A stretch of 64,000 bases of DNA from Macrostomum lignano (GCA_002269645.1 NIVC01000616.1:186001-250000); one strand, 5' to 3'. Shown: positions 12,180 through 44,334, counted from the stretch's first letter. Translations and numbers: made by a program. The notes: generated from the sequence alone by a model not told the origin.

Positions 12180-15100
12180 GAGTGACAGAGAGTGACAGAG
12201 AGTGACAGAGTGACAGAGAGTGACAGTGAGTGACACAAAGGGAGACGGAGAGTGGGACAGACTGATACAGAGAGTGACAGACAGTGGGACAGTGAGTGAG
12301 ACAGAGAGTGACAGACAGTGTGACAGTGAGTGAGACAGAGAGTGACAGACAGTGGGACAGTGAGTGAGACAGAGAGTGACAGACAGTGTGACAGTGAGTG
12401 AGACAGAGAGTGACAGACAGTGTGACAGTGAGTGAGACAGAGAGTGACAGACAGTGGGACAGTGAGTGAGACAGAGAGTGACAGACAGTGGGACAGTGAG
12501 TGAGACAGAGAGTGACAGACAGTGGGACAGTGAGTGAGACAGAGAGTGACAGACAGTGGGACAGTGAGTGAGACAGAGAGTGACAGACAGTGGGACAGTG
12601 AGTGAGACAGAGAGTGACAGACAGTGTGACAGTGAGTGAGACAGAGAGTGACAGACAGTGGGACAGTGAGTGAGACAGAGAGTGACAGACAGTGGGACAG
12701 TGAGTGAGACAGAGAGTGACAGACAGTGGGACAGTGAGTGAGACAGAGAGTGACAGACAGTGTGACAGTGAGTGAGACAGAGAGTGACAGACAGTGGGAC
12801 AGTGAGTGAGACAGAGAGTGACAGACAGTGGGACAGTGAGTGAGACAGAGAGTGACAGACAGTGGGACAGTGAGTGAGACAGAGAGTGACAGACAGTGTG
12901 ACAGTGAGTGAGACAGAGAGTGACAGACAGTGTGACAGTGAGTGAGACAGAGAGTGACAGACAGTGGGACAGTGAGTGAGACAGAGAGTGACAGACAGTG
13001 TGACAGTGAGTGAGACAGAGAGTGACAGACAGTGGGACAGTGAGTGAGACAGAGAGTGACAGACAGTGGGACAGTGAGTGAGACAGAGAGTGACAGACAG
13101 TGTGACAGTGAGTGAGACAGAGAGTGACAGACAGTGGGACAGTGAGTGAGACAGAGAGTGACAGACAGTGGGACAGTGAGTGAGACAGAGAGTGACAGAC
13201 AGTGGGACAGTGAGTGAGACAGAGAGTGACAGACAGTGGGACAGTGAGTGAGACAGAGAGTGACAGACAGTGGGACAGTGAGTGAGACAGAGAGTGACAG
13301 ACAGTGGGACAGTGAGTGAGACAGAGAGTGACAGACAGTGGGACAGTGAGTGAGACAGAGAGTGACAGACAGTGGGACAGTGAGTGAGACAGAGAGTGAC
13401 AGACAGTGGGACAGTGAGTGAGACAGAGAGTGACAGACAGTGGGACAGTGAGTGAGACAGAGAGTGACAGACAGTGGGACAGTGAGTGAGACAGAGAGTG
13501 ACAGACAGTGGGACAGTGAGTGAGACAGAGAGTGACAGACAGTGGGACAGTGAGTGAGACAGAGAGTGACAGACAGTGTGACAGTGAGTGAGACAGAGAG
13601 TGACAGACAGTGTGACAGTGAGTGAGACAGAGAGTGACAGACAGTGGGACAGTGAGTGAGACAGAGAGTGACAGACAGTGGGACAGTGAGTGAGACAGAG
13701 AGTGACAGACAGTGGGACAGTGAGTGAGACAGAGAGTGACAGACAGTGGGACAGTGAGTGAGGCAGAGAGTGACAGACAGTGGGACAGTGAGTGAGGCAG
13801 AGAGTGACAGACAGTGGGACAGTGAATGAGACAGAGAGTGACAGACAGTGGGACAGTGAGTGAGACAGAGAGTGACAGACAGTGGGACAGTGAGTGAGAC
13901 AGAGAGTGACAGACAGTGTGACAGTGAGTGAGACAGAGAGTGACAGACAGTGTGACAGTGAGTGAGACAGAGAGTGACAGACAGTGGGACAGTGAGTGAG
14001 ACAGAGAGTGACAGACAGTGGACAGTGAGTGAGACAGAGAGTGACAGACAGTGGGACAGTGAGTGAGACAGAGAGTGACAGACAGTGGGACAGTGAGTGA
14101 GACAGAGAGTGACAGACAGTGTGACAGTGAGTGAGACAGAGAGTGACAGACAGTGGGACAGTGAGTGAGACAGAGAGTGACAGACAGTGGGACAGTGAGT
14201 GAGACAGAGAGTGACAGACAGTGGGACAGTGAGTGAGACAGAGAGTGACAGACAGTGGGACAGTGAGTGAGACAGAGAGTGACAGACAGTGGGACAGTGA
14301 GTGAGACAGAGAGTGACAGACAGTGGGACAGTGAGTGAGACAGAGAGTGACAGACAGTGTGACAGTGAGTGAGACTGAGAGTGACAGACAGTGGGACAGT
14401 GAGTGAGACAGAGAGTGACAGACAGTGGGACAGTGAGTGAGACAGAGAGTGACAGACAGTGGGACAGTGAGTGAGACAGAGAGTGACAGACAGTGGGACA
14501 GTGAGTGAGACAGAGAGTGACAGACAGTGGGACAGTGAGTGAGGCAGAGAGTGACAGACAGTGGGACAGTGAGTGAGGCAGAGAGTGACAGACAGTGGGA
14601 CAGTGAATGAGACAGAGAGTGACAGACAGTGGGACAGTGAGTGAGACAGAGAGTGACAGACAGTGGGACAGTGAGTGAGACAGAGAGTGACAGACAGTGG
14701 GACAGTGAGTGAGACAGAGAGTGACAGACAGTGTGACAGTGAGTGAGACAGAGAGTGACAGACAGTGTGACAGTGAGTGAGACAGAGAGTGACAGACAGT
14801 GTAACAGTGAGTGAGACAGAGAGTGACAGACAGTGGGACAGTGAGTGAGACAGAGAGTGACAGACAGTGGGACAGTGAGTGAGACAGAGAGTGACAGACA
14901 GTGGGACAGTGAGTGAGACAGAGAGTGACAGACAGTGGGACAGTGAGTGAGACTGAGAGTGACAGACAGTGGGACAGTGAGTGAGACAGAGAGTGACAGA
15001 CAGTGGGACAGTGAGTGAGACAGAGAGTGACAGACAGTGGGACAGTGAGTGAGACAGAGAGTGACAGACAGTGTGACAGTGAGTGAGACAGAGAGTGACA

Positions 15101-17190
15101 GACAGTGGGACAGTGAGTGAGACAGAGAGTGACAGACAGTGTGACAGTGAGTGAGACAGAGAGTGACAGACAGTGGGACAGTGAGTGAGACAGAGAGTGA
15201 CAGACAGTGGGACAGTGAGTGAGACAGAGAGTGACAGACAGTGGGACAGTGAGTGAGACAGAGAGTGACAGACAGTGTGACAGTGAGTGAGACAGAGAGT
15301 GACAGACAGTGGGACAGTGAGTGAGACAGAGAGTGACAGACAGTGGGACAGTGAGTGAGACAGAGAGTGACAGACAGTGTGACAGTGAGTGAGACAGAGA
15401 GTGACAGACAGTGGGACAGTGAGTGAGACAGAGAGTGACAGACAGTGGGACAGTGAGTGAGACAGAGAGTGACAGACAGTGTGACAGTGAGTGAGACAGA
15501 GAGTGACAGACAGTGTGACAGTGAGTGAGACAGAGAGTGACAGACAGTGGGACAGTGAGTGAGACAGAGAGTGACAGACAGTGGGACAGTGAGTGAGACA
15601 GAGAGTGACAGACAGTGGGACAGTGAGTGAGACAGAGAGTGACAGACAGTGGGACAGTGAGTGAGACAGAGAGTGACAGACAGTGGGACAGTGAGTGAGA
15701 CAGAGAGTGACAGACAGTGGGACAGTGAGTGAGACAGAGAGTGACAGACAGTGGGACAGTGAGTGAGACAGAGAGTGACAGACAGTGGGACAGTGAGTGA
15801 GACAGAGAGTGACAGACAGTGGGACAGTGAGTGAGACAGAGAGTGACAGACAGTGTGACAGTGAGTGAGACAGAGAGTGACAGACAGTGTGACAGTGAGT
15901 GAGACAGAGAGTGACAGACAGTGGGACAGTGAGTGAGACAGAGAGTGACAGACAGTGGGACAGTGAGTGAGACAGAGAGTGACAGACAGTGGGACAGTGA
16001 GTGAGACCGAGAGTGACAGACAGTGGGACAGTGAATGAGACAGAGAGTGACAGACAGTGGGACAGTGAGTGAGACAGAGAGTGACAGACAGTGGGACAGT
16101 GAGTGAGACAGAGAGTGACACAGTGTGACAGTGAGTGTGACAGAGAGTGACAGACAGTGGGACAGTGAGTGAGACAGAGAGTGACAGACAGTGGGACAGT
16201 GAGTGAGACAGAGAGTGACAGACAGTGGGACAGTGAGTGAGGCAGAGAGTGACAGACAGTGGGACAGTGAGTGAGACAGAGAGTGACAGACAGTGGGACA
16301 GTGAGTGAGACAGAGAGTGACAGACAGTGGGACAGTGAGTGAGACAGAGAGTGACAGACAGTGTGACAGTGAGTGAGACAGAGAGTGACAGACAGTGTGA
16401 CAGTGAGTGAGACAGAGAGTGACAGACAGTGGGACAGTGAGTGAGACAGAGAGTGACAGACAGTGGGACAGTGAGTGAGACAGAGAGTGACAGACAGTGT
16501 GACAGTGAGTGAGACAGAGAGTGACAGACAGTGTGACAGTGAGTGAGACAGAGAGTGACAGACAGTGGGACAGTGAGTGAGACAGAGAGTGACAGACAGT
16601 GGGACAGTGAGTGAGACAGAGAGTGACAGACAGTGTGACAGTGAGTGAGACAGAGAGTGACAGACAGTGGGACAGTGAGTGAGACAGAGAGTGACAGACA
16701 GTGGGACAGTGAGTGAGACAGAGAGTGACAGACAGTGGGACAGTGAGTGAGACAGAGAGTGACAGACAGTGGGACAGTGAGTGAGACAGAGAGTGACAGA
16801 CAGTGGGACAGTGAGTGAGACAGAGAGTGACAGACAGTGGGACAGTGAGTGAGACAGAGAGTGACAGACAGTGGGACAGTGAGTGAGACAGAGAGTGACA
16901 CAGTGTGACAGTGAGTGAGACAGAGAGTGACAGACAGTGGGACAGTGAGTGAGACTGAGAGTGACAGACAGTGGGACAGTTAGTGAGACAGAGAGTGACA
17001 GACAGTGTGACAGTGAGTGAGACAGAGAGTGACAGACAGTGGGACAGTGAGTGAGACAGAGAGTGACAGACAGTGGGACAGTGAGTGAGACAGAGAGTGA
17101 CAGACAGTGGGACAGTGAGTGAGACAGAGAGTGACAGACAGTGGACAGTGAGTGAGACAGAGAGTGACAGACAGTGTGACAGTGAGTGAG
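12180..17190. repeat. ~5-kb satellite, 34-bp unit (ACAGTGGGACAGTGAGTGAGACAGAGAGTGACAG)
   Basis: About 147 units (5 kb / 34 bp). The 34-aa periodicity of the spurious minus-strand ORFs confirms the unit length. Confidence 0.98.
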
Positions 17191-17612
17191 ACAACGAGAC
17201 CATCTAACTGACAGACTGAACCGAACTGTACTTCGGTCGCTCGCTGCGAACTGGAGAGCGCAGAGTTCGCTCTGCAGTTCAGATTACAAAAAGCGATGCA
17301 AATCTGTGCAGAAACTGTCGCCCTTTGCCCCGACCGCCCCCCCCCCCAAGCAGCTCGGGCCAAAGATCAGCGACCGTGCAATGGTGCCATGAGCGGTGCC
17401 AACCAAGGTCGCTGCTATTAAACAATGTTCCAGCAGCTAGCCGACTTAATCCGGTCTCTGCATGCTGGGTCCCACGGCTGCCAAAAATTTCTACAGCATC
17501 TACAGCCAATAGTTGTGTTCAGTTTAATGTTTGGGGCCGAAAGCAGCCCTGGGAAGGATTGCGGATTAACTTCTTCTGGATTCTGAGCTTCAGCGGCCTC
17601 GCTGGCTTGAGG

Positions 17613-17945
17613 TTATGCTGTGTGAGATGATGCTGTGTGAGATGGTGCTTTGTAAGATGGTGCTGTTGGAGATGGTGCTGTTTGAGATGGTGCTGTTTGA
17701 GAAGGTTCTGTTTGAGATGATGCTGTTTAGATGATGCTGTGTGAGATGGTGCTGTGTGAGATGGTGCTGTGTGAGATGGTGCTTTGTAAGATGGTGCTGT
17801 TGGAGATGGTGCTGTGTGAGATGGTGCTGTGTGAGATGGTGCTGTTTGAGATGATGCTGTGTGAGATGGTGCTGTTTGAGATGGTGCTGTTTGAGATGGT
17901 GCTGTTTGAGATGGTGCTGTTTGAGATGATGCTGTTTAGATGATG
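17613..17945. repeat. 15-bp minisatellite (GAGATGGTGCTGTTT), left half of the array split by the YR retrotransposon
   Basis: Same unit and orientation as 22016-22345. Ends ...AGATGATG at the element junction. Confidence 0.95.
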
Positions 17946-18064
17946 TTAAACACGCCGGAAGGAGCCAAACGAGACAAAGTCAGTTGCGAAAAGCAGGCAG
18001 CGGCCGAGAAAGCGGATCCCAACCCCAATGATGGGGAAGGGAAGGAGTAAAAGCGGGAAGGCAG

Positions 18065-19062
18065 TCAGGTGGACGCAGCCTGCAGCTGCGAAGCCATGAA
18101 AGAAGCAGAGCGCTGGCGGCGCGACAGGGCAGAGCTGGCAGAAAAGTAGCGGAGAACAGCGTCCGATCTCCAGCCCCCAAGAGCCCGAACGTCTGATTCT
18201 GACAAGCCGATTTGATGGCAGAAGCTGGCACCCCCACGCCGGATGCTGTGGCCGGAGAAACCAGCAGCTGGAAGGCCGCACGCAGCCAGACACGCACGAA
18301 GACAGCTGATGAACTGGCTGGCTGAGAGCTCGCCTCCGTGGCCGTAGCCAAAGAACGGCGCCCTTGGGTCGCTGGCTGGTGACAGGTGCAGGTGAGACAG
18401 TAGAGCGCGCACAGGGCAGAGCGGTGACTCTTGAACAGGTGGCAGAAGAACGACATGCGGCGTCGACCCGAACTGGTTGGTCTTGGACTTAGGGAGGGTC
18501 AACTTCCAGCAGCCAGGTGAAGCCGACAGGCAGGCCCGTGAGACAGAGCGGCTGCCGCGGGTCGATAGGAAGTCGCCAAGGCGCAACATGCCCCACCAGC
18601 CCACCAGAAGAGCCGCCCAGAAGGCGGCCCTGAGATCTGCGCTTGAGATGGAGCGCGGGAGCTGCTGATGGATGCTCTTGAGGTGCTCGATGGTCAGCGG
18701 CTTCGCCTGTTTGCATCGCAGGCCGAGATGACGTTTGGCGCCGCGAAGGGCCAGCTGCACGGTGAAGTCTTTCGCTGGGTCGGGGGCGCCGGTGGCTTGG
18801 TGCAGAAAAGAGACGGCATGGATGTAGGATCGGAGGCTAGAGAAAGACCGGAGCCGGGTGCTCACCAGGTGCGCAATGTAGCGGCAGAGCAGGTCACCGT
18901 CAGCTGGAGATGAAGGGCGGCCTGCGCTAACACAGAAGGCTTCCCAGGAGCGCAGCTGGCTGAGGTAGGATCGCCAGGAGTTCTCCGCCAGGCCGAGGCG
19001 GCACAGGTGTCTGGCAGACACAGCGCGGCGGGCGGGCGGCGTCTCCGGAGGGCGAGGGCGAC
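18065..19062 (-). CDS. Tyrosine recombinase (ORF3), with no upstream ATG in frame
   Basis: Catalytic residues appear intact: R in 'MLRLGD', K in 'KSKTNQ', H-x-x-R in 'HSIRRG', W in 'GGW', Y in 'VLRYF'. Preceded by an SAM-like core-binding region ('SWRSYLSQLRSWEAFC...LRSYIHAVSFLH'). Confidence 0.95.
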
Positions 19063-20727
19063 CTGCAAAAGGAGGCGAGATTGGGAAGCGGCAGAGAGCG
19101 CGTGCGACGCGAACTCAAGCGGGCAGATCACGAGCGTACGGTAGTAGCGGCAGCAAAAGTTAATGAGCTCAGACTGCGAGGCAAACATGCGCGAGGCGGC
19201 ATCAGCAAAAATCTGCATGCGACCAGGAAGGTGAAAGGCCTCCAAACTGATGCTGTTCCTGGTGCACAGCAGAGCCACAGTCTGGTACACCTGCAGGAAC
19301 CGCGGGTCACGACAGCTCAGTCGATTGATCATGCCAGCCGCAGCGGTGCTGTCGGTGTAGATGACAATCTTGCAGTTCTTTAGCTGAGAGCGACGGTGCA
19401 GGATGATCAGCAAAGGTGCCAGAGCCTCCTTGAAGTTGATATGAACATCCTTGAACACACCACCGCAGTCCAGCTCCCAGTCGATGACACTCCAGAAACT
19501 CTCGGCACCCCAGATGACTGCGGCTGCGCCCGACCGGCTGCTGTCAGTCTCCATGGCAAACTCCTCATCAAAGCGCGGCCACAAAGGCACCGGGGGGAGC
19601 CAAGCCAGGGCTCTGAGCCACCAGGACAGGTTGGCGCGGGTCTCATCGGTCACCCAAAGCTTGCAGTCAACAGCAGTTGTCAGCCAGTCGCAGAGCGAAC
19701 GCAGGAAGACTCTGACATGAGGGACAATCTGACAGAACCAGCCAAGCTTGCCAATCAGCTTCTGAGCAGAGCGCATGTGCACCCGAGTCTCCGAGCAGGT
19801 TTGAGTCAGCAGCTTTGTCGTCTCGAGAGCTTTCTCCTCGGGCAGCGACTTGGTGCCGGTAGCGGTGTTGATGCGCACGCCAAGGAAGTCGATGCATTGC
19901 GTAGGTCTGACAACCTTGTCCCAGTTGATGGCAAAGCCGAGGCGCTGCAGGATGTCCAGCAGGCAATTGAAAGCAGCGAAAGCCTCGGACTCGGATTTCC
20001 CAGCGACTGCCCAGTCATCCAGGTAGTTCACCGTAGCAGAAAAGCCAAGCCGGTGCATGTGTCGGGTAACGGCGGCTGAAAGACGGTGAAAAACTTCGCA
20101 AGCAGCTTTGGCGCCGAAGGGAAGCCTGGTGTCGCAGAGCAGACTGTCCTGGCTGTCCGAGTCAAACCGCCAGGCGAGGCCGACGAGCCGGTAGTCAGCA
20201 GGCCTGATTGGCACGGACCTGTAGGCGCTTTTGAGATCAATTTTGGCCATGTAGTGTCCCGGATGGAGATGACGAACCAGCTGCTGGACAGTGCAGTACT
20301 TGATGTGCTTCTGTTGGTCGTAGAAGTCGTTGACAGACTGGCCGGTCGGATAGGACAGGTCATGGATCAGGCGGACCCGCCCGTCGGACTTGGGAAGGGC
20401 ACCGATGGGGTTGATTTTGATCGGGCCGCTCCACCGGATGTACCTCCCAAGGCGCAGCTCCTCCTCGACCTGGGCTTCCACAGCAGAGCGGTGCAGCAGG
20501 GCGGAGGCGTGGTTCTTGGACGAAGTCAAAGGTGGCTGGCCAGCATTGGTGAGAGCGAAACCGTTGACGACGCCTTGCATCAGAAAGTCGCGGTCTGGGT
20601 CGTCGCTGAGCAGAGCACTCCAGGCGTCAGGTTGCAGGTCAGACGAGATGGGCAGCGAAGAAGTAAAAGCAGAAAAATCGGAATTAAAAGCAGAGCAGTC
20701 AGCTGGATAAAATGGCATCAGTTTTTT
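18862..20727 (-). CDS. Reverse transcriptase + RNase H (ORF2) of the YR retrotransposon
   Basis: RT motifs 'KIDLKSAYRSVP', 'RLPFGAKAAC' and 'YLDDW'. RNase H motifs 'ETDSS', 'HINFKEA', 'IYTDS' and 'FADAASR'. No stop codons. The ORF lies in the -1 frame relative to ORF1. Confidence 0.95.
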   Translation of the reverse strand, partial: KKLMPFYPADCSAFNSDFSAFTSSLPISSDLQPDAWSALLSDDPDRDFLMQGVVNGFALTNAGQPPLTSSKNHASALLHRSAVEAQVEEELRLGRYIRWSGPIKINPIGALPKSDGRVRLIHDLSYPTGQSVNDFYDQQKHIKYCTVQQLVRHLHPGHYMAKIDLKSAYRSVPIRPADYRLVGLAWRFDSDSQDSLLCDTRLPFGAKAACEVFHRLSAAVTRHMHRLGFSATVNYLDDWAVAGKSESEAFAAFNCLLDILQRLGFAINWDKVVRPTQCIDFLGVRINTATGTKSLPEEKALETTKLLTQTCSETRVHMRSAQKLIGKLGWFCQIVPHVRVFLRSLCDWLTTAVDCKLWVTDETRANLSWWLRALAWLPPVPLWPRFDEEFAMETDSSRSGAAAVIWGAESFWSVIDWELDCGGVFKDVHINFKEALAPLLIILHRRSQLKNCKIVIYTDSTAAAGMINRLSCRDPRFLQVYQTVALLCTRNSISLEAFHLPGRMQIFADAASRMFASQSELINFCCRYYRTLVICPLEFASHALSAASQSRLLLQVALALRRRRPPAALCLPDTCAASAWRRTPGDPTSASCAPGKPSVLAQAALHLQLTVTCSAATLRTW

Positions 20728-21833
20728 GCACTTGCACCAGTCACGTGACCCGGCAGCTGTCCGGTGAGAAATGACTGCGGCGACTGCGTGTGAGCATGAG
20801 CCGGGTGCGCTGCCAGGCAGCCTTGGATTTTGCAGACGTGGCGGAACTTGCAGTTCTGGCGGTTGCATCCGGACTCGGAGTTGAAGCGCAGACAGATCGG
20901 CCTGGTTGCTGCCGGGATTTGCTGCTGGCTGGGCTGCTTAGCGAACGTAAACCGCAGGTTTCTGGGGGCGTTGAGGTGCTTGTGGTACAACTGAGGGGGC
21001 TCCTCACCCCACGCCATGCCCGACTCCGCCACCAGCCTCCGGTAGTCCTCGTCAAACTCCCAGATTACGGACTCTGGGTAGTCAGCAGCCAGCAGCTCTC
21101 CGATCTTGCGATTGTAGTCAAGGTAGCCAAGGACGTCAGTCAGGAGACCATCAGTGCTTCCAGCAGCCACCGGGAGTTTTTCCTTGATCAGCTTTTGCAA
21201 GATGATCGAGTTGGCCGCGATCCACTGACCAGCAGAGATACTAGACAGCTTCGGCTCCTGCTTTCTGAATGTGAGCGAGCCATTCTCCATAGTGGCGATC
21301 AACTGCTCCTGACTGGCTGAGCCGGATCCTCTGGCTAGCTTGATGTGGTCTCTGACGAGATGCAACTTGCGAGTCGGAGCCTGGCAATTAGCGGCCTGAA
21401 GCTGAGCCGCCTCCCTCATCCCAGATTCAAAAACCTCGGGCAACTGCAGACTGGCATGTGCGTTATGCTCACCTGATGATGATGCTGGCTGGGGCTGAGC
21501 CGTCAAGCGCTGCTGAGTGTGAAGCTGTTGCTGAAGATCACGACGACGGCCTTCCAGGACTTGCAGTTCGAGCAGCTCCACCTCCTGCCGCAACGCAGCC
21601 AGACGGTCGCTCCCCGCCCCCGGAGGCGCCTCGCCCGCGCTGCCGATGCCGTCTTCGGCGTCCGGAGCAGAAGTCATCTCGGAGTTGTTGAAGTCTTCGT
21701 CAGCTTGCTCTAAACCGAGTGCAGTAGACAAGCGCTTGGCAAGCTGTTGTTTGCGGCCCGTAGTAGGCAGGCCTCTGTTTCGCAGCTCAGCCTTGAGTTG
21801 GCGCACGGTTAGTCGCTTTGGGCTGGCACTCAT
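20718..21833 (-). CDS. Gag-like ORF1 with N-terminal SAP domain, coiled coil and C-terminal CCCH/CCHH-type zinc fingers
   Basis: ATG at 21833 in ACCGCCATGA context. 'LTVRQLKAELRNRGLPTTGRKQQLAKRL' fits the SAP consensus. 'CLRFNSESGCNRQNCKFRHVCKIQGCLAAH' resembles the zinc-finger C-terminus of DIRS/Ngaro ORF1. Confidence 0.85.
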   Translation of the reverse strand: MSASPKRLTVRQLKAELRNRGLPTTGRKQQLAKRLSTALGLEQADEDFNNSEMTSAPDAEDGIGSAGEAPPGAGSDRLAALRQEVELLELQVLEGRRRDLQQQLHTQQRLTAQPQPASSSGEHNAHASLQLPEVFESGMREAAQLQAANCQAPTRKLHLVRDHIKLARGSGSASQEQLIATMENGSLTFRKQEPKLSSISAGQWIAANSIILQKLIKEKLPVAAGSTDGLLTDVLGYLDYNRKIGELLAADYPESVIWEFDEDYRRLVAESGMAWGEEPPQLYHKHLNAPRNLRFTFAKQPSQQQIPAATRPICLRFNSESGCNRQNCKFRHVCKIQGCLAAHPAHAHTQSPQSFLTGQLPGHVTGASAKN

Positions 21834-22015
21834 GGCGGTGGCTGAGCAAAAAAATTGAGAAATGGCGGCGGAGCCAAGCCGGGCCGGGTGCAGAGGCTTT
21901 AAGCTGGCTGGCGTGGCCAACCCCCACACCTCAACCCCCCGCCAAAGTACAGCGATATGTACAGCGGCACCCTCCGGCGCGTCTAACACCCCTTACTCAG
22001 AGAGTAACGATTGCA

Positions 22016-22345
22016 CTGTTTGAGATGGTGCTGTTTGAGATGGTGCTGTTTGAGATGGTGCTGTGTGAGATAGTGCTGTTTGAGATGGTACTGTTTGAGA
22101 TGATGCTGTTTGAGATGGTGCTGTTTGAGATGGTGCTGTTTGAGATGGTGCTGTGTGAGATGGTGCTGTTTGAGATGGTACTGTTTGAGATGATGCTGTT
22201 TGAGATGGTGCTGTTTGAGATGGTGCTGTGTGAGATGGTGCTGTTTGAGATGGTACTGTTTGAGATGATGCTGTTTGAGATGGTGCTGTTTGAGATGGTG
22301 CTGTTTGAGATGATGCTGTTTGAGATGGTGCTGTTTGAGGTGGTG
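22016..22345. repeat. 15-bp minisatellite (GAGATGGTGCTGTTT), right half of the split array
   Basis: Directly visible. Confidence 0.95.
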
Positions 22346-23265
22346 CTGCTGAGCGAACGCGTGACCTGCTACAGTCACCAGATGTAATAAAAGTCTGCAA
22401 GCACTTCAACTCTGTGTTGCATTTTTAGTAGGACTTTTTGCATTTTGTGTAAACAGGAAATCCAAAAGCCTCTGAAAAAGTTATTTTTTCAAAACTGTTT
22501 GAACAATCCTGCAGCGTTAAAAGACACCGCACATTTTTAGAAGCAGTGACAATTTCTACAGATCGAAGCGATAGCAGACCGAACTTCAAGGTGTCAGGCC
22601 ACGCCTTCTACAGAAATCAGTGCATCAATAACTCAGTTTGATTGGGCAGGACGCTGTTTGGTCCCGAGCTTCAGTGGCATCTGCACCGCAGTGACTTTAC
22701 AGCCAATCTACCTCTTATTGCCAATCCCCCATGCTTTGCACTTTTGCCTCGCATTTATGGCAATCGGAATGCGTTTTCGGCCTGGAATTTCTGCGAACTT
22801 CTTGGCATTTTTATGACCGCGCGGCCCACGGAAACATCGCCGGAATGCGCTGCCCTGCGTCCCGGGAAACCGCAGCTTGCACTTTAACTGCAGTCACAGG
22901 CGTGTCAGTCACAAGATTCGAACCCTGGGATGTCCCAGATCCAGAGGATCCGCACGGAGAGTTCTTAGAAAATTCGCTCCTTAGCGGCTGGCGCGATACC
23001 GAACTGCACCATTGGGCCCGGCGAACTCGCTGCGAACTTGCAGCAGCGCAGCGGGGGGGGGGGCAAACTGCGGCAAACATGCCGAGGAGGCGGGGTGGGC
23101 GGGGCCGCACTCGGCGTCAACAGGTCGTTAAAAATTTTTATTTCATCGGGGAGGGGGCGGGCGCAGCGGCGGACCTTTCGCTGGCCCGATAAATATGCGA
23201 GGCAGCCCGCGGAGTGCCGGCATTTCCAAGATCGATCGCTGTCATCACTTCTGACAACACCGACG

Positions 23266-31128: not shown

Positions 31129-33736
31129 GGCGCCCCAGTTGCTGCCAGACAGCGCCGCCAGAACGCCGCAGCGGGCGCGGGCGCGGCCGGAGACGTTGGC
31201 GGCGTGCGCCGTGAAGCTGAGCAGCCGGTCCAGGATTAGGCCGAGGAAGCGCGGCTGGCGGTCCGTCGAGAGCGGGGCGTCGTTCAGCCGCAGACGCAGC
31301 TCGCGGCTGGCCTCTCCGGCGGTGATGGTGAACAGGGAAGCGGCGCACTTGTTCGGCGCCAGCTCCATCCGCCACTCGTTCGCCCAGTCGGAGACCGCGT
31401 TGATCGCAGCCTGCGCCTTCGTCTCGGCCTCCTCCACGGTCAGGCCTTGCACTTCAATGGCCAGGTCGTCGGCGTAGAGGAACGGCGTGCAGTCGGACGG
31501 CAGGTGGTCAGACAGGTCGTTGATGTACAGCGCAAAGAGCAGAGGGGGAAGGACACTCCCCTGTGGCAGGCCCTCGCAGAAGAGCCGCCAGCTGCTCAGC
31601 GCGCCGTCCACCCTGACGGCAGCGCGGCGATCGGCCAGGAAGCTGCTGAGCCAGCGGACCCCGGCCGCTGGGATGCCGGCGTTGTGCAGCTTGTGCAGCA
31701 GGCCCTGCTTCCAGACGGTGTCGTACGCCCGCCGGAAGTCGAACAGGACGACGACCGTCCGCCTGGCGGGGGCCGCCTGGTGGCCGTCGCTGATGAGCTG
31801 GGTGAGCCGGGCGATCTGGTCCTCGGTGCTGCGCCGCTTGCGGAAGCCGGCTTGGGCGGGGTGCAGCAGGTGCTGGGACTCTGCTCACCAGTAGAGCCGA
31901 GCTTGAACCAGACGCTCGGCCAGCTTGGCCAGGGTGGAGGTGAGGGCAATCGGCCGGTATGAGCCGATCTCGTCGGCCGGCTTTCCCTTCTTGAGGATCG
32001 GCACGACGTGGGCACGGCGCCACGCCGCGGGGACCTCCCCCTGGGTCCAGGACGCGTTGATCAGCTGCAGGACCGCCCGGCGGCCAGCGGCACCGAGGTG
32101 CTGCACATGTTCAGCGCAGATCTCATCGGGTCCTGGAGCCTTCCTGGCCGGGAGGGAGTGGAGAGCCCTGTCCAGCTGGCGGTGCGAGAACGGCTTTCCA
32201 AAGTCTCTGCTCCCATGGCTGTCGGCGCCGGCTCGCGAAACGCTGCTGCGGAAGTTCTCGCGGCGGAGGTTTCGCGTCCTGCGGTCTTGCGGGAGGCGGC
32301 TGACGGCGGCATACTCACGGGCGTAGGCCTCGGCGATGTCCTTCGACTGGACGAGCGTCTTTTGGCCCACCCGGAGCGCTGCGTCCCGCTGCAGGTTGCT
32401 ATTTCTGCCGTCGAGGGAGCGGACAACTCTCCAGATCTTGGAGTGGTCGCTGTCGGCAGCCACCTCGCCGGCGAAGGTCTTCCAGCTCTCGCGTTTGGCG
32501 TCGGCGATCGTCTTCTTGGCGTCGGCACAGGCTCGATTCCAGGCAGGACGCACGCTCGGGTCGGCGGTGGCGGCGGCCCGCGCGGCGCGGTGAGCCTTCA
32601 CGGCGTCGTCGACCTCTGGCGTCCACCAGGCCTTCGCGGAGGGCCGCGCCCCGCGAGAGACAGACGCCTTGTCGGCCGCCTGGATGGCCGTGGTCAGCTG
32701 CTGGTTGGCCTCGCTGACCGACTCGGGCGGGCAGGCCTCCCAGCCAGCCAGGGCTTCCTCGGTCCGGGCGCAGAAACTGGCCCAGTCCGCCTTCGCCCAG
32801 GACCGCCGGGCGGCGCCCCCGCGCTTGGCCGCGCCTCGGCTGTGGATGGTGATGCAGATCGGCAGGTGGTCCGAGCCGACGTCTCCCCGGACCTGCCACT
32901 CGGCCCGGTTGGCGAGCGACTTGTGGCACAGGCTGACGTCAGGCGCCGTCTGCCGGGTGTTGGCGCGGCGCGGCATGTGGGTGGCGCTGCCGTCGTTCAG
33001 GACGCGCATGCCGGACACCACGGACCACTCGAAGACCGCCGTGCCCAGGTCCGACTCTTCCGATTCGGGGTCCCAGGCCGAATGGTGCGCGTTCAGGTCG
33101 CCCAGGATCACCGTGTTGACGCCGGACGGGAGGTGCTGGGGGCTGAACCGCTGCACGCGGTCGTCGCCTTCAGCCGTTCTGATCGGCGGGATGTAGAGGC
33201 AGTGGATGTCCAGGCTCTCGACGCTCTTTTCAGAGGGGAAAACCCGGACGCCGGCCCACTCCGTGGTGACATCATCGGGGGCGCAGGGGTGCTCCTGCAG
33301 CACCTCGAAGCGCAGCCCCTCGCGGATGAGGATTGCAGCGCCTCCTCCGCGCGTGGGGCCGCCGGCGCCGGCCGCTCTGTCGGTGGCGCCAGATCGCGTT
33401 GAACCCCGGCAGGCGCGGATCCCGACCTTCGGTGGTGTGGGTCTCTTGCAGGCACACCACGTCGATGCGCAGATCCAGCAGCAGCTTGCACAATTCGGGC
33501 ATCTTGGAGGCGACGCCCTCTGCGTTGAGTTGCAGGAGGTGCAGGCTACTGGGGGGCCGCGCGCGCGCGGGCCGCTGGGTCGGGGGGCGCCTCGCGCCGC
33601 CGGGGGCCCGCCGTTGAGGCTCGGCGGGCTGGTTCAGGCGTCGGCTAGTCATTTAATCGGCAGGTGGCCGCCAGATGCCAATTGGGCAGCAAAGAGACTG
33701 CGTCGCGGTGTTGGGCCTCGGGAAGGGCCCGTTGCT

Positions 33737-39689: not shown

Positions 39690-42600
39690 CAATTCAAGTA
39701 GCTGACTGATAGGACTTGATGATTAGCAGTGCTCAACTCTGATGCTTAATATTAGCGCCGGTGGTTGATAGCTGTGAGATGCTGGCCAGGCATGAGGTGA
39801 GCAGGACAGCAGAGCGTATTTTCCACTCTAATATCAACTTGCCATTTGGCATCCAGAGTCTAAAATCAACATCTCTAACTCTACCACTTTACACAGCCAA
39901 GCCTCTCTGGCCTAACAGAAGATGCAGAAGCCTGCAGACTCCATGTTTACAAGCATACTGTACAGATTTACTCAAAGTAGACAATTAATACAATACCAAC
40001 CCCATGGGAATCAAGAATCCCAATCAAGTATACAATTTCAATCATACATGCGCAACAGTCGGCCGAGTCGGCCGATCCGGCCGACCGATTTGGCAGCCAA
40101 TCAAGGAAGTCGCAAAAATGCCCACCCGAAAAAATACCAAAGTAGTATTACTAAGTAGCTGACGAGGCATTTTGAACTAATAAGACAGTCATAGTTACTC
40201 CTGCCGGTTACCCAAAGTTGCGTTAATTTTGCGCTATGGTTTTTAATTACATGTAAGTCGCATTTTTGGCCAAAAACTACGTCGCATTTTTGTTAAAACT
40301 AAGTCGCATGGCCGACTGAATTTTGGAGGTTGCGCATGTATGATTTCAATGTCTAAATTTAGGATGCCAATATAAAGTCAAACTATCATGATATGCAGAT
40401 TAAAGGCCTAACTCTAACATCTTTTAAGACTAACACTAACACTAAAGACTAAAGAAAGGTTAAATTTAAAAGCTAAGACCTAAAATGATATATATAGGTC
40501 ATTTATATATATTTATATATATTATATATTATATATATTTAGGCCATATATATATGTTAAGCTAAAAATTAGTAAGGCTTAGGCTTAACTTAAGTACTAA
40601 AGTAGTAAATGAAGATATATTTCAAATAACAAACAAACAAATAAGTAACAAGTTTTTAGCCAAGTCAAAAATGATCATAGTATGCAATATTAAGCCTAGC
40701 CCTACGCAAGGGCAAGGCAAAATAAATTATAAAAATCATTAAAATCTAAAAAATTTAAGATATACCTTACCTTCCCAGCATTTGTCATAATTTGGATCAT
40801 GTATTAGTATAGCCTATGCCAGGAAAAAAGAACAAGACTTTATTTGCTAGGACTACTAAACAAATATTTTCACTATGTATATTAAAGTTATAGTATATGC
40901 ATGCTTTTTTATATTTGTAATTATATAATACAAGCTGTTAAAACCCGCGGATTTTGAACTGGAGGAATTCCAATACCCGGAACTATTTTTGCATGTATTT
41001 TTGAAATCTGGGGCCATACTCAAACAAAAACTTGTTAATTGTTAGTAGGATAGAGTCAACAAAATGGAGTATTGTATGTATATACATATTGTATGTATAT
41101 ACATATTGTATGTATTGGCAAACTCTGGCCTCTGCCTCTCCTATATCCCTTGGATCCTTTAAAACTTCTATATTCTCTTCTGTTTCTTTCTTCTCTGTTG
41201 TCCCTTGTCCTTTCTCTTTTCTCTCTCTCCTCTAATCTCTTTTTTTTCCTCCTCTCTCCCTTCTTTTTCTTGGATCTTCCATCATCTTTCTTCTCTTTTA
41301 TCTCTTATCTCTTTACTCTTCTTTTCTCTCTCCTCTTATCAGTCTAATAACCAAGGAATATGCACTTTATAGGAGGCTATTTAAATTTTAAAGTCACCTT
41401 TAAGAAAAACTTAAAATTTTTATAGTGTGACTAATTCAGTAAGGTTGTATTGCATTACATTGCCTTTTCATAAATCTTTCACTTCTACAAACCATGCTAG
41501 ATTGCCTTGATTTGCCAATTGCCTGTGCTATCTACTATGCATAGTAGATATGCATATATATATATATATATATATATATACTATATACTATATATATATA
41601 CTATATGCATAGTAGAACTATGCATAGACACAACCTTGGGAATCACTTGGCCATTTCTATTGGCAACACACATAGGTAAGTTGCTATTGGACAGAATAGT
41701 AGTCACATGATTGCTCTTAGCCAATAGCAACCTAAGCCATTTGGGAATATCCTATTATAGATTTCCCATTATTATAGTGTGTAAAGCTTTTGCTATTTGT
41801 TGGCAGTTTGACCATAGACAATATTTTTTATTTGTTTCTGTTAAGACTTGTTTATTTGTTAATGTTTTGGCCATAGACTATTAATAGCTTTTCAGTGTTA
41901 GATATATTATAACAAGTTTTGAAACATAAAATTAGGGCCTAGTTAAGCTTAGCTTTCTTAAAAATAGCTATGATAGACTATTGTATCTTTATATTTAGTG
42001 TCAGATACATTTTAACAAGTTTTATAGCATAGAATTAGTGCTTAATCAGGCTTAAGTCTCTTAAAAGTATATAATTGTATTTTAAATAGCCTAGTTCATA
42101 CATTACTTTTTTAGAGTCAAAATAATTTAACAAACAAAACTTGACAATTGCCATCCATCATATACTATCATATTCACTGAAAAATGGCAAGTACCATAGA
42201 CCTTGCTGTTGTATACTAGGAGATCCTAGTATGACATACATAGGCCTATATTGCCTTTCCAAACTATGGTCTAGAGAATCTCTAATATTATATAATAGGC
42301 CTAGGCCAGTAGGCCTAATGAATGCAAATATACATAATAGGCAATAGACCTAGTCTTAGATTACTTTAAAAAAACTATTTTACAAGTTAAGTTACCCTCT
42401 ATAAATTATAATTAAACAGATTATACAACCAAGCTTAAAAAAGATAGCCCCAGCCTAGCCTAGGCCTAATAAATATATGAAAAAGTAGGCCTAGGGCTCA
42501 ATGTAAGTCTTAGGACATTGTTTGATATTTAATTTCTATTTTATTTTTACATAGGCCTAATATTAATAGTAATATAATATATGCCGATATCAATAAAAGA

Positions 42601-44334
42601 ATAGGCCTAAGTAGCCCTCTAATGAATCTAGATAGAGAAACAATGTTCAAACTTGTAATAAGATACCAATTAGGTCATTAATCAACTAAAAAACAACTAT
42701 GACTCCACTATTGTGAATTTGGGGGACCAGCTGGACGAAAGAATGAGATAGGCCTAAGCCTTTTTTACCGGAAAATTTTTCACTTTATATCTAGCATTTT
42801 GACTTAGATGCAAAATATGCCTAGGGCTACTTTATTCGAAAATGTTATGATAAACAGAAATAACTTACGGTTGTTTAAATTATTGTTCATTTTTCAAATT
42901 TGGCGAGTTTACAACACGAATCGATTTTATACAGAGCGCCGGGCCGCGGGGCCGCCGCGTCGTCTTATCATCGCATCCCAATAAGAAATATTCAATAAAT
43001 GCAATCACTAGAAATTTCGCTGGTCGAACCGTCAATTAAATGAAAAATTGATCCAACATGTCAGGAAGATGCAGGGCCTGGCCTTGTAAATAGAATATAA
43101 CGAAGGAAATCAGTGGATAGGCTCTAGGCTATAGCCTTAGCCTAGGCCTATAGCTATGTATGGTCTAAAGTGACGTCCAATTGATATGATATTTATATTT
43201 AAAAGTATCCCAGGGCCATGACAGTCCGCCTATTGCCCTATGTTATGACTTATGAGCATGACGACCAGTATGACCTAAAGTTTTTTAAATAATATACATT
43301 TTTTTAGGTCAAGGCCTATTTTTTGAACAAAATATGAGTTATTTCGTACAAATTTATCACTTTCAGTTATTTTTGGAAATCTTGAAAAATTTTGAGTTAA
43401 AATTTAGAGAGGCAATTCTTTCTTATCCTTCTAGGCCTAATTATACTTTTCATAGCTAGGGACAATAGTCTGATTAAGTAAGACAACTTTTGTTGAATTA
43501 GCTACCTAGGCAAGGCCTATACTATCTTGATATATTAGAAAAAAAAGTGGCACCACTGAGCATTTGATGTTTCATTACAATAAAAGGTTTAGTTAGGGCT
43601 AGGCCTAGACTTATAAGCTTTAAGTTTTTAAAAATAAGTTAAAGTTTTTAAGCTATATTTATAATATAAATTTTTCAAGCTAAAATATACAAATAGTATA
43701 AAAATAGGCCTAGGTCATAATCTTAGTAAATTAGACCTACTAGCAATCTAATGCAGTGCCCCCCTTTGGAGTATGTAATAAGCAAAGAGCAAAATTATTC
43801 ATGGAAAACAATTAAAAAAATCATATTTTCCTAAGAACCAATTTTTTCTTCAGTTTTTTAATCACCTTATCTGAGTAAACTTGTAATGCTAATGGACAAA
43901 TATGTTTGCTAGGGCCTATGAAATATTCTTTTTTATAGGTAATAGAAAGACAATAAAATATAGTTTTTATTTTTACAAAGATAGCCTAATAGACATACAG
44001 ACATTCTCACCTAAATAAAACACATCTCCATAATAGCAAGCATCCACTTAGATAGTAAATATCCTACAGATAGCAAGCATTTCCTAGATAGAAAGCACCC
44101 CTCTAAATACAATAACAATAATTAGTACTTACACCCCTAAATGCAATGGTAAGCATCTTCTAGATAATAAGAAGCCACTAGATAGCAAGTAGCTAGTGCA
44201 AATATTTTCTCTACTAATGCAATAATCACTTTTTCAGGTTTGAAATAATCCATGTCTCTAGGTCTTAATTAGGCCTAGTCTATTTCTAAGCTAGTAGAAT
44301 AATCTTTAGTTTATCAAGTATAGTAGGCCTAATC

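What the first reader, a model, noticed from the sequence alone, without database searches (positions are those of the whole stretch)
18065..21833. Predicted spliced SAP-domain / tyrosine-recombinase fusion encoded by the retrotransposon
The YR reading frame has no ATG between its upstream in-frame stop (~19110) and the catalytic Arg. A consensus donor sits in ORF1 (TCA TCA G|GTGAGC, exon end 21473). A pyrimidine-rich acceptor sits just before the YR (TCTCGCCTCCTTTTGCAG|GT, exon start 19062). Both are phase 1, and joining them gives 361+998 = 1359 nt, a 452-aa protein: SAP + coiled coil, then G-R-P-R-P, then the full recombinase. One element would thus make Gag, Gag-Pol and a SAP-tethered recombinase. 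The splice signals and frame match are seen in the sequence; actual splicing is inferred. A SAP DNA-binding module on the integration enzyme could help explain target choice. It also echoes the vertebrate LEM + DIRS-derived LAP2alpha architecture, since LEM and SAP share a fold.
Basis: partly seen in the sequence, partly recalled or inferred. Interest (0 to 1): 0.82.

Follow-up and report, generated by a model that had tools for sequence, protein, structure and literature searches.

The report
Spliced Gag-head/recombinase fusion in a retrotransposon
A jumping gene in the flatworm Macrostomum lignano very probably makes its DNA-inserting enzyme by splicing the DNA-binding front end of its coat-protein gene onto the enzyme's otherwise start-less reading frame, and the same splice signals recur in about fifty distant relatives, which points to a general, apparently undescribed way these elements express and perhaps aim their recombinase.

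Summary
On the minus strand, 22015-17943, lies an intact Ngaro-type tyrosine-recombinase (YR) retrotransposon of Macrostomum lignano. ORF1 has a SAP domain and a long predicted helix. ORF2 encodes RT/RNase H. The Cre-like YR frame has no Met until two residues before its catalytic Arg.

The proposed donor (CAG|GTGAGC, exon end 21473) and acceptor (CCTCCTTTTGCAG|GT, exon start 19062) are the top-scoring splice sites of the whole element. Both are phase 1. Joining them gives a stop-free 452-aa SAP + helix + YR protein.

The decisive evidence is comparative. A phase-blind scan of de-duplicated relatives (RT about 32-43% identical) put the best donor of ORF1 in phase 1 in 46 of 52. The best acceptor before the YR was phase 1 in 53 of 65, at a homologous position. 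Controls inside ORF2 showed no bias.

A RefSeq model in the limpet Patella vulgata uses exactly this intron. A UniProt M. lignano gene model is a contiguous SAP-YR protein with the same junction.

Frameshifting, spliced-leader trans-splicing and internal initiation fit poorly. No junction RNA could be checked. The SAP head is specific to Macrostomum; relatives carry SAM-like, zinc-finger or basic heads. Any role in targeting is inference.

The parts
22016..22348 (.). 15-bp tandem array (about 22 copies) directly upstream of the element. It may be the A1 terminal direct repeat, or it may be the satellite the element inserted into.
   Evidence: TRF. It is 91% similar to the array at 17616-17942.
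21834..22015 (-). 5' leader of the element. It contains no upstream ATG.
20718..21833 (-). ORF1, Gag-like, 371 aa plus stop. It has a SAP domain, a long helix, a conserved Gag core and a C-terminal Cys/His zinc-knuckle-like motif.
   Evidence: The Gag core is homologous to the ORF1 of relatives.
21723..21818 (-). SAP domain, ORF1 residues 6-37.
   Evidence: Pfam PF02037, E = 7e-11, 41.9 bits in ORF1 and 46 bits in the fusion, cut-off 23.9 bits.
21501..21617 (-). Long predicted helix (candidate coiled coil), ORF1 residues 73-111. It lies inside exon 1.
   Evidence: The AF2 single-sequence model gives H73-111, its best-confidence segment, but the model as a whole is poor.
21473..21833 (-). Coding part of exon 1: 361 nt, that is 120 codons plus 1 nt.
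21467..21475 (-). 5' splice site CAG|GTGAGC, phase 1. It is the top-scoring donor of the whole element.
   Evidence: It matches the M. lignano cis-donor motif GT[G/A]AG (PMC8629364).
19063..21472 (-). Predicted retained/alternative intron, 2410 nt. It contains the Gag core and most of ORF2, including the RT and RNase H domains.
   Evidence: Relatives have introns of about 2.2-2.4 kb with the same content.
20721..20727 (-). A_AAA_AAC heptamer, in frame with ORF1 and directly before its stop. It is a candidate -1 frameshift site for Gag-Pol. The sequence TGATG at 20720-20716 also overlaps the ORF1 stop with an ORF2 ATG.
   Evidence: No stable downstream structure was found.
18862..20868 (-). ORF2, from its first ATG; the frame is open from 20937. 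It is in the -1 frame relative to ORF1. RT lies at about 20286-19870 and RNase H at about 19572-19327.
   Evidence: Pfam RVT_1 E = 3.5e-12; RT_RNaseH is weak, E = 0.026. 115 homologues were found, the best 43% identical.
19063..19084 (-). 3' splice site: a pyrimidine tract followed by TTGCAG|, phase 1 relative to the YR frame. It is the top-scoring acceptor of the whole element.
   Evidence: It matches the M. lignano acceptor motifs CAG and [T/C]TNCAG.
18065..19062 (-). Exon 2: a Cre-like tyrosine recombinase (998 nt including the stop), in the -1 frame relative to ORF2. The first in-frame Met is at 18589.
   Evidence: PDB Cre, E = 3e-11, aligned over the N-terminal domain, the LRL (Arg) segment and the GHSxR / GGW / Y motifs. 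Also.
17943..18064 (-). 3' untranslated tail of the element. No AATAAA or ATTAAA signal was found.
17616..17942 (.). 15-bp tandem array (about 22 copies) directly downstream of the element. It may be the A2 terminal repeat. No B1/B2 repeats were detected.

Best explanation
The region is an intact Ngaro-type tyrosine-recombinase retrotransposon of Macrostomum lignano. It most likely uses one primary transcript in two ways.

**Unspliced RNA.** This is the genomic RNA and the mRNA for Gag (ORF1). It is probably also the mRNA for Gag-Pol, by a -1 frameshift at A_AAA_AAC or by reinitiation at the TGATG overlap.

**Spliced RNA.** A fraction is cis-spliced from the donor at 21473 to the acceptor at 19062, removing 2410 nt that hold the Gag core and most of ORF2. 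The ORF1 AUG then drives translation of a 452-aa protein made of three parts:
- Gag residues 1-120 (SAP domain plus a long helix);
- a junction Gly codon (G|GT);
- the complete Cre-like recombinase.

**Shown.**
- The signals, frames and domains are present in the window.
- Both splice sites are conserved in position and phase across the family.
- Independent gene models have the same exon structure.

**Inferred.**
- The splice is actually used in M. lignano.
- The shared N-terminal module couples the recombinase to Gag assemblies and/or to chromatin, and so influences where the element integrates.
For: **In the window**
- Coordinates, arithmetic and the open fusion frame are verified.
- The donor and the acceptor are the best-scoring sites of the whole element.
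- They match the host's own splice motifs (PMC8629364).
- The YR frame has no usable Met, and 28 ATGs lie between the element's 5' end and the acceptor.

**Acceptor conservation**
- In 53 of 65 de-duplicated relatives, the best acceptor within 200 nt upstream of the YR homology lies inside the open YR frame at phase 1 (p = 2e-15).
- The last three intron bases are CAG in 47 and TAG in 5.
- In 46 of 48 loci it maps within 4 codons of the junction in locus L007.
- In 14 loci ORF2 has already stopped upstream of the acceptor, so no coding constraint explains the signal there.

**Donor conservation**
- In 46 of 52 relatives the best donor anywhere in ORF1 is phase 1 (p = 2e-16), usually just upstream of the conserved Gag core.
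- The junction codon is GGT in 44 of 46. The next codon is GAG (Glu) in 20 and AAG (Lys) in 15. A swap between opposite charges fits a purine requirement at intron position +3, not a protein constraint.
- Control: inside ORF2 the best donors fall 20/20/9 across the three phases and the best acceptors 21/17/11.

**Independent gene models**
- RefSeq XP_050388701.2 (Patella vulgata): exon 1, then a 2248-nt phase-1 intron holding the Gag core and RT/RNase H, then the YR.
- UniProt A0A1I8J2F9 (M. lignano): a contiguous SAP + helix + YR fragment. It aligns with the predicted fusion over residues 15-360, with SSQG|RSRAP opposite SSSG|RPRPP.
- XP_077986280.1 (Glandiceps talaboti): a basic, coiled-coil-like head followed by the YR.

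**Against frameshifting**
- The YR frame relative to ORF2 is +1 in 21 loci, -1 in 35 and the same in 5.
- The window's ORF2/YR overlap contains no slippery heptamer.
Against: - No junction-spanning RNA read, cDNA or peptide was available. All support is genomic, comparative or from gene models whose evidence basis I could not check.
- The exact 452-aa product is absent from the 15-billion-protein collection.
- The splice-site matrix I used is a generic, vertebrate-like one.
- About 10-20% of relatives do not have the phase-1 site as their top-scoring site.
- In five relatives the YR frame matches the ORF2 frame. In at least one of them, L075, it runs on from ORF2 without a stop. A Pol-YR polyprotein is therefore possible in some lineages.
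- DNA binding by the SAP domain and any role in targeting are untested.
- The AF2 model of ORF1 is poor (pLDDT 40).
Confidence: 0.78

Rival explanations
1. The recombinase is translated from the unspliced RNA as the C-terminal part of a Gag-Pol-YR polyprotein, by a second ribosomal frameshift in the 253-nt ORF2/YR overlap.
For: - In the window the YR is in the -1 frame relative to ORF2, and the two frames overlap from 19114 to 18862.
- ORF1 to ORF2 is also a -1 shift, with a good heptamer.
- The published view is simply that YR ORFs 'can be frameshifted and overlap' (PMC3783388).
- In five relatives the YR frame matches the ORF2 frame. In at least one, L075, the frame is open continuously.
Against: - The overlap contains no X_XXY_YYZ heptamer in any frame.
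- Among relatives the YR is +1 in 21, -1 in 35 and in the same frame in 5, so no single recoding mechanism is conserved. The phase-1 acceptor and donor are conserved.
- A frameshift does not explain a conserved pyrimidine tract plus CAG at a fixed phase. It also does not explain the GGT-GAG/AAG donor in ORF1.
Confidence: 0.07
2. In M. lignano the acceptor at 19062 is a spliced-leader (SL) trans-splice site. The YR is made from an SL-capped subgenomic mRNA, not from a cis-spliced fusion.
For: - About 30% of M. lignano genes are SL trans-spliced.
- SL acceptors carry the motif [T/C]TNCAG, which TTGCAG fits.
- The 35-nt SL ends in ATG (PMC8629364).
Against: - SL...ATG|GTC GCC puts the SL's only AUG in the ORF2 frame, not the YR frame. 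That gives a short product from the ORF2 tail frame. The next in-frame YR Met is at 18589, past the whole N-terminal domain.
- The same paper states that trans-splicing predominates when no cis donor lies upstream. Here the strongest donor of the element lies upstream in a matching phase.
- The architecture is conserved in a mollusc (L088, Patella) and in many metagenomic loci whose hosts are unknown. A matching fusion-length model is annotated in a hemichordate. SL trans-splicing is not known to me in those phyla.
Confidence: 0.05
3. The YR is translated by internal or non-AUG initiation (for example at the GTG at 19021, or through an IRES) on unspliced RNA. The splice-like motifs would then be by-products of the overlapping coding frames.
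For: - A GTG at 19021 opens a 318-aa ORF.
- The acceptor region also encodes the ORF2 tail in most loci (37 of 51).
Against: - A scanning ribosome would have to pass 28 ATGs.
- The residues just upstream of the junction vary in the YR frame, while the nucleotides YAG are fixed.
- In 14 loci ORF2 ends before the acceptor, yet the signal persists.
- This model gives no reason for a phase-matched, conserved donor in ORF1.
Confidence: 0.05
4. The match is coincidental in this copy, or the gene predictors were misled by the same motifs. The element may be transcriptionally dead, so nothing is made.
For: - Only one copy lies in the window.
- The UniProt M. lignano models that contain parts of this element are chimeric.
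Against: - All three ORFs are intact.
- A 100% identical YR copy exists elsewhere in the genome (P0124).
- The conservation statistics cannot be coincidence.
Confidence: 0.04

Closest known systems
Ngaro retrotransposons (DIRS order; tyrosine-recombinase retrotransposons)
   Same: - The order gag-like ORF1, RT/RNase H, YR.
- No methyltransferase, protease or DDE integrase.
- Overlapping ORFs.
- Relatives carry the canonical split direct repeats A1-[ORFs]-B1A2B2.
   Different: - Expression of the YR through a conserved phase-1 intron that fuses it to the N-terminus of Gag is not described in any paper I could search.
- A SAP domain in ORF1 appears only in M. lignano: the window copy plus two other M. 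lignano gene models.
- The window copy shows only 15-mer arrays as flanking direct repeats and has no B repeats.
Subgenomic spliced mRNAs of retroviruses and env-bearing LTR elements. By my own knowledge, the avian leukosis/Rous sarcoma virus env mRNA has its donor inside gag, so Env starts with the first Gag codons; gypsy env mRNA is another case.
   Same: - One transcript serves unspliced as genome and gag-pol mRNA, and spliced as mRNA for a downstream ORF.
- The donor sits inside gag, so the downstream protein borrows the gag AUG and its first residues.
   Different: - Here the borrowed part is a 120-aa functional module (SAP plus helix), not a few residues.
- The downstream protein is the integration enzyme, not an envelope protein.
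LAP2alpha (TMPO): a DIRS1-Gag-derived domain joined by alternative splicing to a LEM-containing N-terminus (PMC4495291)
   Same: A helix-extension-helix type DNA/chromatin-binding head (LEM or SAP; the fold relation is from my own knowledge) is joined by alternative splicing to a domain of DIRS-order origin.
   Different: - LAP2alpha is a domesticated host gene, and its transposon-derived part is Gag-like.
- Here the element is autonomous and the joined part is the recombinase.
- ORF1 of the window gave no LAP2alpha Pfam hit.
Targeting modules on integrases of LTR retrotransposons (chromodomain integrases of chromoviruses, Ty5/Tf1 tethering; my own knowledge)
   Same: The concept of a chromatin- or DNA-binding module physically attached to the integration enzyme.
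   Different: - Those modules are encoded contiguously with a DDE integrase.
- Here the module is shared with Gag and attached by splicing to a tyrosine recombinase.
- The function is untested.

Membership tests
Ngaro-type YR retrotransposon (DIRS order) | Reverse transcriptase plus RNase H ORF | tested here: met
   Pfam RVT_1 E = 3.5e-12. RT_RNaseH is weak, E = 0.026. 115 RT/RNase H homologues were found.
Ngaro-type YR retrotransposon (DIRS order) | Tyrosine recombinase with the R...HxxR...W/H...Y catalytic set, in place of a DDE integrase | tested here: met
   Matches Cre recombinase in the PDB at E = 3e-11. LRL (Arg), GHSIRRGG, GGW and LRY align with the corresponding Cre motifs. Fusion numbering: R281, H392, R395, W418, Y426. 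There is no integrase or protease Pfam hit.
Ngaro-type YR retrotransposon (DIRS order) | Gene order gag, RT/RNase H, YR, with no methyltransferase domain (this separates Ngaro from DIRS1-like and PAT-like elements) | tested here: met
   ORF map. There is no methyltransferase hit in ORF2, and the RNase H domain is followed directly by the YR.
Ngaro-type YR retrotransposon (DIRS order) | Split direct repeats A1-[ORFs]-B1-A2-B2 | tested here: inconclusive
   Relatives meet this feature: L007 has A = 198 bp and B = 141 bp, and L016 and L028 also show it. In the window only the two 15-mer arrays are shared between the flanks (91% similar). No B1/B2 similarity rises above shuffled controls.
SAP domain (PF02037) | Sequence match above Pfam's gathering score | tested here: met
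   41.9 bits in ORF1 and 46 bits in the fusion, against 23.9 bits. Two other M. lignano gene models, P0125 and P0126, also pass at 28.9 and 24.3 bits.
SAP domain (PF02037) | DNA or chromatin binding | not testable with these tools
   This needs EMSA, ChIP or localisation experiments.
Spliceosomal GT-AG intron used for alternative expression | Consensus donor and acceptor with compatible phase, giving an open frame | tested here: met
   The sites match the host's splice motifs.
Spliceosomal GT-AG intron used for alternative expression | Conservation of both sites, in position and phase, among divergent relatives | tested here: met
   Donors 46 of 52 and acceptors 53 of 65 in phase 1. ORF2 controls are flat.
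Spliceosomal GT-AG intron used for alternative expression | Junction-spanning transcripts | not testable with these tools
   No RNA-seq is accessible. Only gene models are available: RefSeq Patella and UniProt A0A1I8J2F9.
Programmed -1 ribosomal frameshift as the route to the YR | Slippery X_XXY_YYZ heptamer in the ORF2/YR overlap | tested here: not met
   None in any frame between 19114 and 18862. The frame relation also varies among relatives.
Flatworm spliced-leader AUG as initiator for the YR | The SL's terminal AUG is in frame with the downstream ORF | tested here: not met
   ATG|GTC GCC reads the ORF2 frame, not the YR frame. The SL sequence is from PMC8629364; the frames are.
LAP2alpha-like DIRS Gag | Pfam LAP2alpha domain in ORF1 | tested here: not met
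   No hit at E <= 0.1.

The most novel reading that the evidence does not exclude
Across animal Ngaro-type retrotransposons, a conserved phase-1 intron turns ORF1 into a two-part gene. Its interchangeable N-terminal head is SAP in Macrostomum, and SAM-like, CxxC zinc-finger or basic plus coiled-coil elsewhere. The head is translated both on Gag and, after splicing, on the tyrosine recombinase.

This would be the long-missing expression route for the ATG-less, overlapping YR ORFs. It would also give the physical link by which 'ORF1' sets integration-site preference and brings the recombinase to the Gag/cDNA complex.
Probability: 0.6. Interest if true: 0.85.

Novelty: new variant of a known kind. 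Interest (0 to 1): 0.72.

Why it matters
How tyrosine-recombinase retrotransposons express their overlapping, often start-less recombinase ORF has been left open. Papers only note that the ORFs 'overlap' or are 'frameshifted'.

A conserved splice that borrows the Gag start and a functional Gag head would settle this for a large animal clade. It would change how these elements should be annotated: ORF finders and prokaryote-style gene callers miss the real product.

It also offers a concrete, testable mechanism for target-site choice and for recruiting the recombinase to Gag particles. This fits the observation that loss of ORF1 changes where Cafeteria Ngaros integrate (PMC8547959).

Finally, it flags chimeric, transposon-contaminated gene models in the M. 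lignano proteome.

Tried and rejected
- **Word-indexed protein search with the 452-aa fusion.** It gave only 8 distant hits and missed a 100% identical protein that the full HMMER scan later found. The reason was not established. Its negative result was discarded.
- **Exact look-up of the predicted fusion and of eight predicted fusions from relatives.** None is in the collection. This is uninformative, because the look-up needs whole-sequence identity.
- **Other copies in the window.** There are none, so within-window copy comparison was impossible.
- **-1 frameshift into the YR.** No slippery site was found.
- **Stimulatory structure after the ORF1 heptamer.** None was found (z = +1.9). Gag-Pol by frameshift therefore stays a hypothesis, and the TGATG stop/start overlap is an alternative.
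- **B1/B2 split repeats in the window element.** Not found.
- **Pfam on ten exon-1 heads of relatives.** Negative. A profile of 17 heads gave only weak SAM-domain matches, so 'SAM-like' is tentative.
- **AF2 on ORF1 without an alignment.** The model was poor, so no fold search was run.
- **Literature.** Seven full-text searches and several targeted reads found no description of YR expression by splicing in DIRS or Ngaro elements. The founding Ngaro paper (Goodwin & Poulter 2004) is not in the library, so priority cannot be excluded.
- **P0124.** Its methionine-synthase part is not in the window.

Full report
**1. What is there**

The minus strand between about 22015 and 17943 carries one intact retroelement, flanked on both sides by roughly 330 bp of the same 15-bp tandem repeat. 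It has three reading frames.
- **ORF1** (21833-20718, 371 aa) begins with a SAP domain (PF02037, residues 6-37, E = 7e-11). It continues with a long predicted helix at residues 73-111 (a poor model overall). It ends with a Cys/His zinc-knuckle-like motif.
- **ORF2** (first ATG at 20868, stop at 18862) is in the -1 frame. It carries RT (RVT_1, E = 3.5e-12) and a weak RNase H match.
- **The third frame** (open from 19114, stop at 18065) is -1 again. It encodes a Cre-like tyrosine recombinase (PDB Cre, E = 3e-11). The Arg, HxxR, Trp and Tyr motifs align with those of Cre.

There is no methyltransferase, protease or DDE integrase. The element is therefore of Ngaro type.

A protein 100% identical to the recombinase is deposited as part of a Macrostomum lignano gene model (UniRef A0A1I8JHY2). 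The window therefore comes from this free-living flatworm. Because the rest of that model is not in the window, a second identical copy must exist elsewhere in the genome.

**2. The observation**

- The donor is TCATCAG|GTGAGCAT, with the exon ending at 21473.
- The acceptor is TCTCGCCTCCTTTTGCAG|GT, with the exon starting at 19062.
- Both are phase 1. 361 + 998 = 1359 nt gives a 452-aa product with no internal stop.
- The recombinase frame opens after a TGA at 19117-19115. Its first Met is at 18589, two residues before the catalytic Arg.
- The ORF1 AUG is in a good context with no upstream AUG. Twenty-eight ATGs lie between the element's 5' end and the acceptor.
- With a generic splice-site matrix, these two sites rank first among all donors and all acceptors on the element's sense strand.
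- They fit the cis-splice motifs reported for this species, GT[G/A]AG and CAG (PMC8629364).

**3. Comparative test**

No second copy lies in the window, so I collected relatives from public assemblies.
- The RT/RNase H protein found 115 homologues, the best 43% identical.
- A pattern scan of metagenome contigs returned 80 further loci with 32-40% RT identity.
- The first three relatives I read by eye came from hosts of very different base composition (L005, L006, L007). All had an ATG-poor recombinase frame preceded by a pyrimidine tract and (C/T)AG| in phase 1. Where ORF1 was present (L006, L007), they also had a G|GT(G/A)AG donor in phase 1 just upstream of the conserved Gag core.

I then made the test blind to phase.
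- **Acceptors.** For each locus I took the best-scoring acceptor within 200 nt upstream of the recombinase homology. After removing near-identical loci, 53 of 65 lie inside the open recombinase frame at phase 1. One third would be expected by chance (p = 2e-15).
- **Donors.** For each locus I took the best-scoring donor anywhere in ORF1. 46 of 52 are phase 1 (p = 2e-16).
- **Control.** The same procedure inside ORF2 gives 20/20/9 for donors and 21/17/11 for acceptors across the three phases.
- **Position.** The acceptor maps within four codons of the L007 junction in 46 of 48 loci, and at exactly the same codon in 21.
- **Both sites.** In 32 of 42 loci with both ends present, both top sites are phase 1. 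The implied intron is mostly about 2.2-2.4 kb and every fusion is open.

**4. Nucleotide constraint, not protein constraint**

- The junction codon is GGT in 44 of 46 donors.
- The next codon is GAG (Glu) in 20 and AAG (Lys) in 15. A swap between opposite charges makes sense only as a purine at intron position +3.
- The residues just upstream of the acceptor in the recombinase frame vary (FAG, LAG, PG, TG, TD and others). The nucleotides CAG (47) or TAG (5) are fixed.
- In 14 loci ORF2 has already terminated upstream of the acceptor, so no coding frame constrains it there.

**5. Independent gene models**

A full HMMER scan of 1.8 billion cluster representatives found proteins in which an ORF1-type head is contiguous with the recombinase.
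- **RefSeq XP_050388701.2** (Patella vulgata, 452 aa). I fetched its locus. The model is exon 1, then a 2248-nt intron, then exon 2. The donor is GCAA|GTATGT and the acceptor TTATTTATTTCTAAACAG|AT, both phase 1. The intron contains the Gag core and RT/RNase H.
- **UniProt A0A1I8J2F9** (M. lignano, a 344-aa fragment). It consists of SAP, a helix and the recombinase. It aligns with the predicted window fusion over residues 15-360 (40% identity, E = 2e-64), with SSQG|RSRAP opposite SSSG|RPRPP.
- **XP_077986280.1** (Glandiceps talaboti). It has a basic, coiled-coil-like head followed by the recombinase.

These are annotation-pipeline models. I could not check whether transcripts support them.

**6. 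Rivals**

- **A second -1 frameshift.** The 253-nt overlap has no slippery heptamer. Among relatives the recombinase is +1 in 21, -1 in 35 and in frame in 5 relative to ORF2.
- **Spliced-leader trans-splicing.** This is common in M. lignano, and the leader ends in AUG. But ...ATG|GTC GCC reads the ORF2 frame, not the recombinase frame. A strong cis donor also lies upstream.
- **Non-AUG or internal initiation.** It explains neither the conserved donor nor the fixed acceptor phase.

**7. Mechanism proposed**

- Unspliced RNA is the genome and the mRNA for Gag. An in-frame A_AAA_AAC heptamer sits directly before the ORF1 stop and ORF2 is in the -1 frame, so a Gag-Pol fusion is plausible. No downstream structure was found, however, and a TGATG stop/start overlap offers reinitiation as an alternative.
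- Spliced RNA encodes Gag(1-120)-Gly-recombinase.
- The shared head contains a DNA-binding-type domain and a long helix. I infer that it ties the recombinase to Gag assemblies and/or chromatin.
- Among the loci and proteins examined, SAP occurs only in M. lignano: the window copy and the gene models P0125 and P0126. Relatives instead carry other heads:
  - a module with weak SAM-domain similarity;
  - a CxxC...C zinc-finger-like motif;
  - a basic stretch plus a coiled-coil-like segment.
- The heads are interchangeable while the splice is constant. This suggests modular evolution of a shared Gag/recombinase adaptor.
- It fits the report that Cafeteria Ngaros lacking ORF1 integrate elsewhere (PMC8547959).

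**8. Family membership and novelty**

- Relatives have canonical Ngaro split direct repeats. The window copy has only the flanking 15-mer arrays and no B repeats.
- Seven full-text searches and several targeted reads found no description of recombinase expression by splicing in DIRS or Ngaro elements. The founding Ngaro paper is not in the library.
- I therefore rate this as a new variant of a known kind. It combines retrovirus-like subgenomic splicing with a donor inside gag, applied to a tyrosine-recombinase retrotransposon, and produces a functional Gag-head/recombinase fusion.

**9. Verdict**

Confidence is 0.78 that cis-splicing is the expression route, with direct RNA evidence still lacking. 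The targeting role of SAP remains a hypothesis.

Noticed in passing
window 22016-22348 and 17616-17942: The element is bracketed by two arrays of the same 15-bp repeat. They are almost equal in length (about 22 copies each) and 91% similar. They may be tandem-repeat terminal direct repeats (A1/A2), or a satellite that the element targets. No B1/B2 repeats were found.
   Followed up: partly
window 20727-20716 (minus strand): An A_AAA_AAC slippery heptamer lies in frame directly before the ORF1 stop, and ORF2 is in the -1 frame. The stop also overlaps an ORF2 ATG (TGATG). Both frameshifting and termination-reinitiation are therefore possible for Pol. No stable downstream RNA structure was found.
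   Followed up: partly
UniProt M. lignano models A0A1I8JHY2, A0A1I8HJ75, A0A1I8IKY0, A0A1I8G0Z6 (P0124, P0133, P0135, P0125): Deposited M. lignano gene models are chimeras that contain pieces of this retrotransposon family. Examples: a 'methionine synthase' that starts with 329 aa of the recombinase, beginning exactly at the first full codon after the acceptor, and GPCR and Mab-21 models with ORF1 or YR segments. P0135 joins a degenerate exon-1-like stretch directly to the YR. It could be a retro-copied spliced mRNA.
   Followed up: partly
loci L011, L014, L017-L020, L028, L034, L040, L041, L045, L052-L054, L061, L063, L064, L066, L068; also L007, L043, L077; also L025, L047, L050: The exon-1 heads of relatives fall into three recurring types. 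The first is a roughly 60-aa module, F..W...L...T..L....TS..AL..L...D....P.GQ..LL, with weak SAM-domain similarity. The second is a CxxC...C zinc-finger-like motif followed by a coiled-coil-like stretch. The third is a basic N-terminus followed by a coiled-coil-like stretch.
   Followed up: partly
window 12184-17193: A 5-kb array of 34/68-bp tandem repeats lies next to the element. It creates spurious ORFs of 1,600-1,700 aa. The whole window is unusually rich in tandem repeats (83 TRF rows).
   Followed up: no
window 31888-33303 (minus strand): An ORF with an endonuclease-reverse-transcriptase domain (Exo_endo_phos_2, E = 5e-14). It is probably a non-LTR (LINE-like) retrotransposon fragment.
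   Followed up: no
window 58958-59977 (plus strand): An ORF with an OSR1_C domain (E = 9e-13). It is probably an exon of an OSR1/SPAK- or WNK-type kinase gene.
   Followed up: no
window 40001-44000: A sharp drop in G+C to about 32%, against 47-63% elsewhere in the window.
   Followed up: no
L075 (and possibly the other loci where the YR frame matches the ORF2 frame): In L075 the recombinase frame is continuous with RT/RNase H, yet the phase-1 acceptor is still present with a high score. Both a Pol-YR polyprotein and the spliced fusion may therefore be made in that lineage.
   Followed up: no
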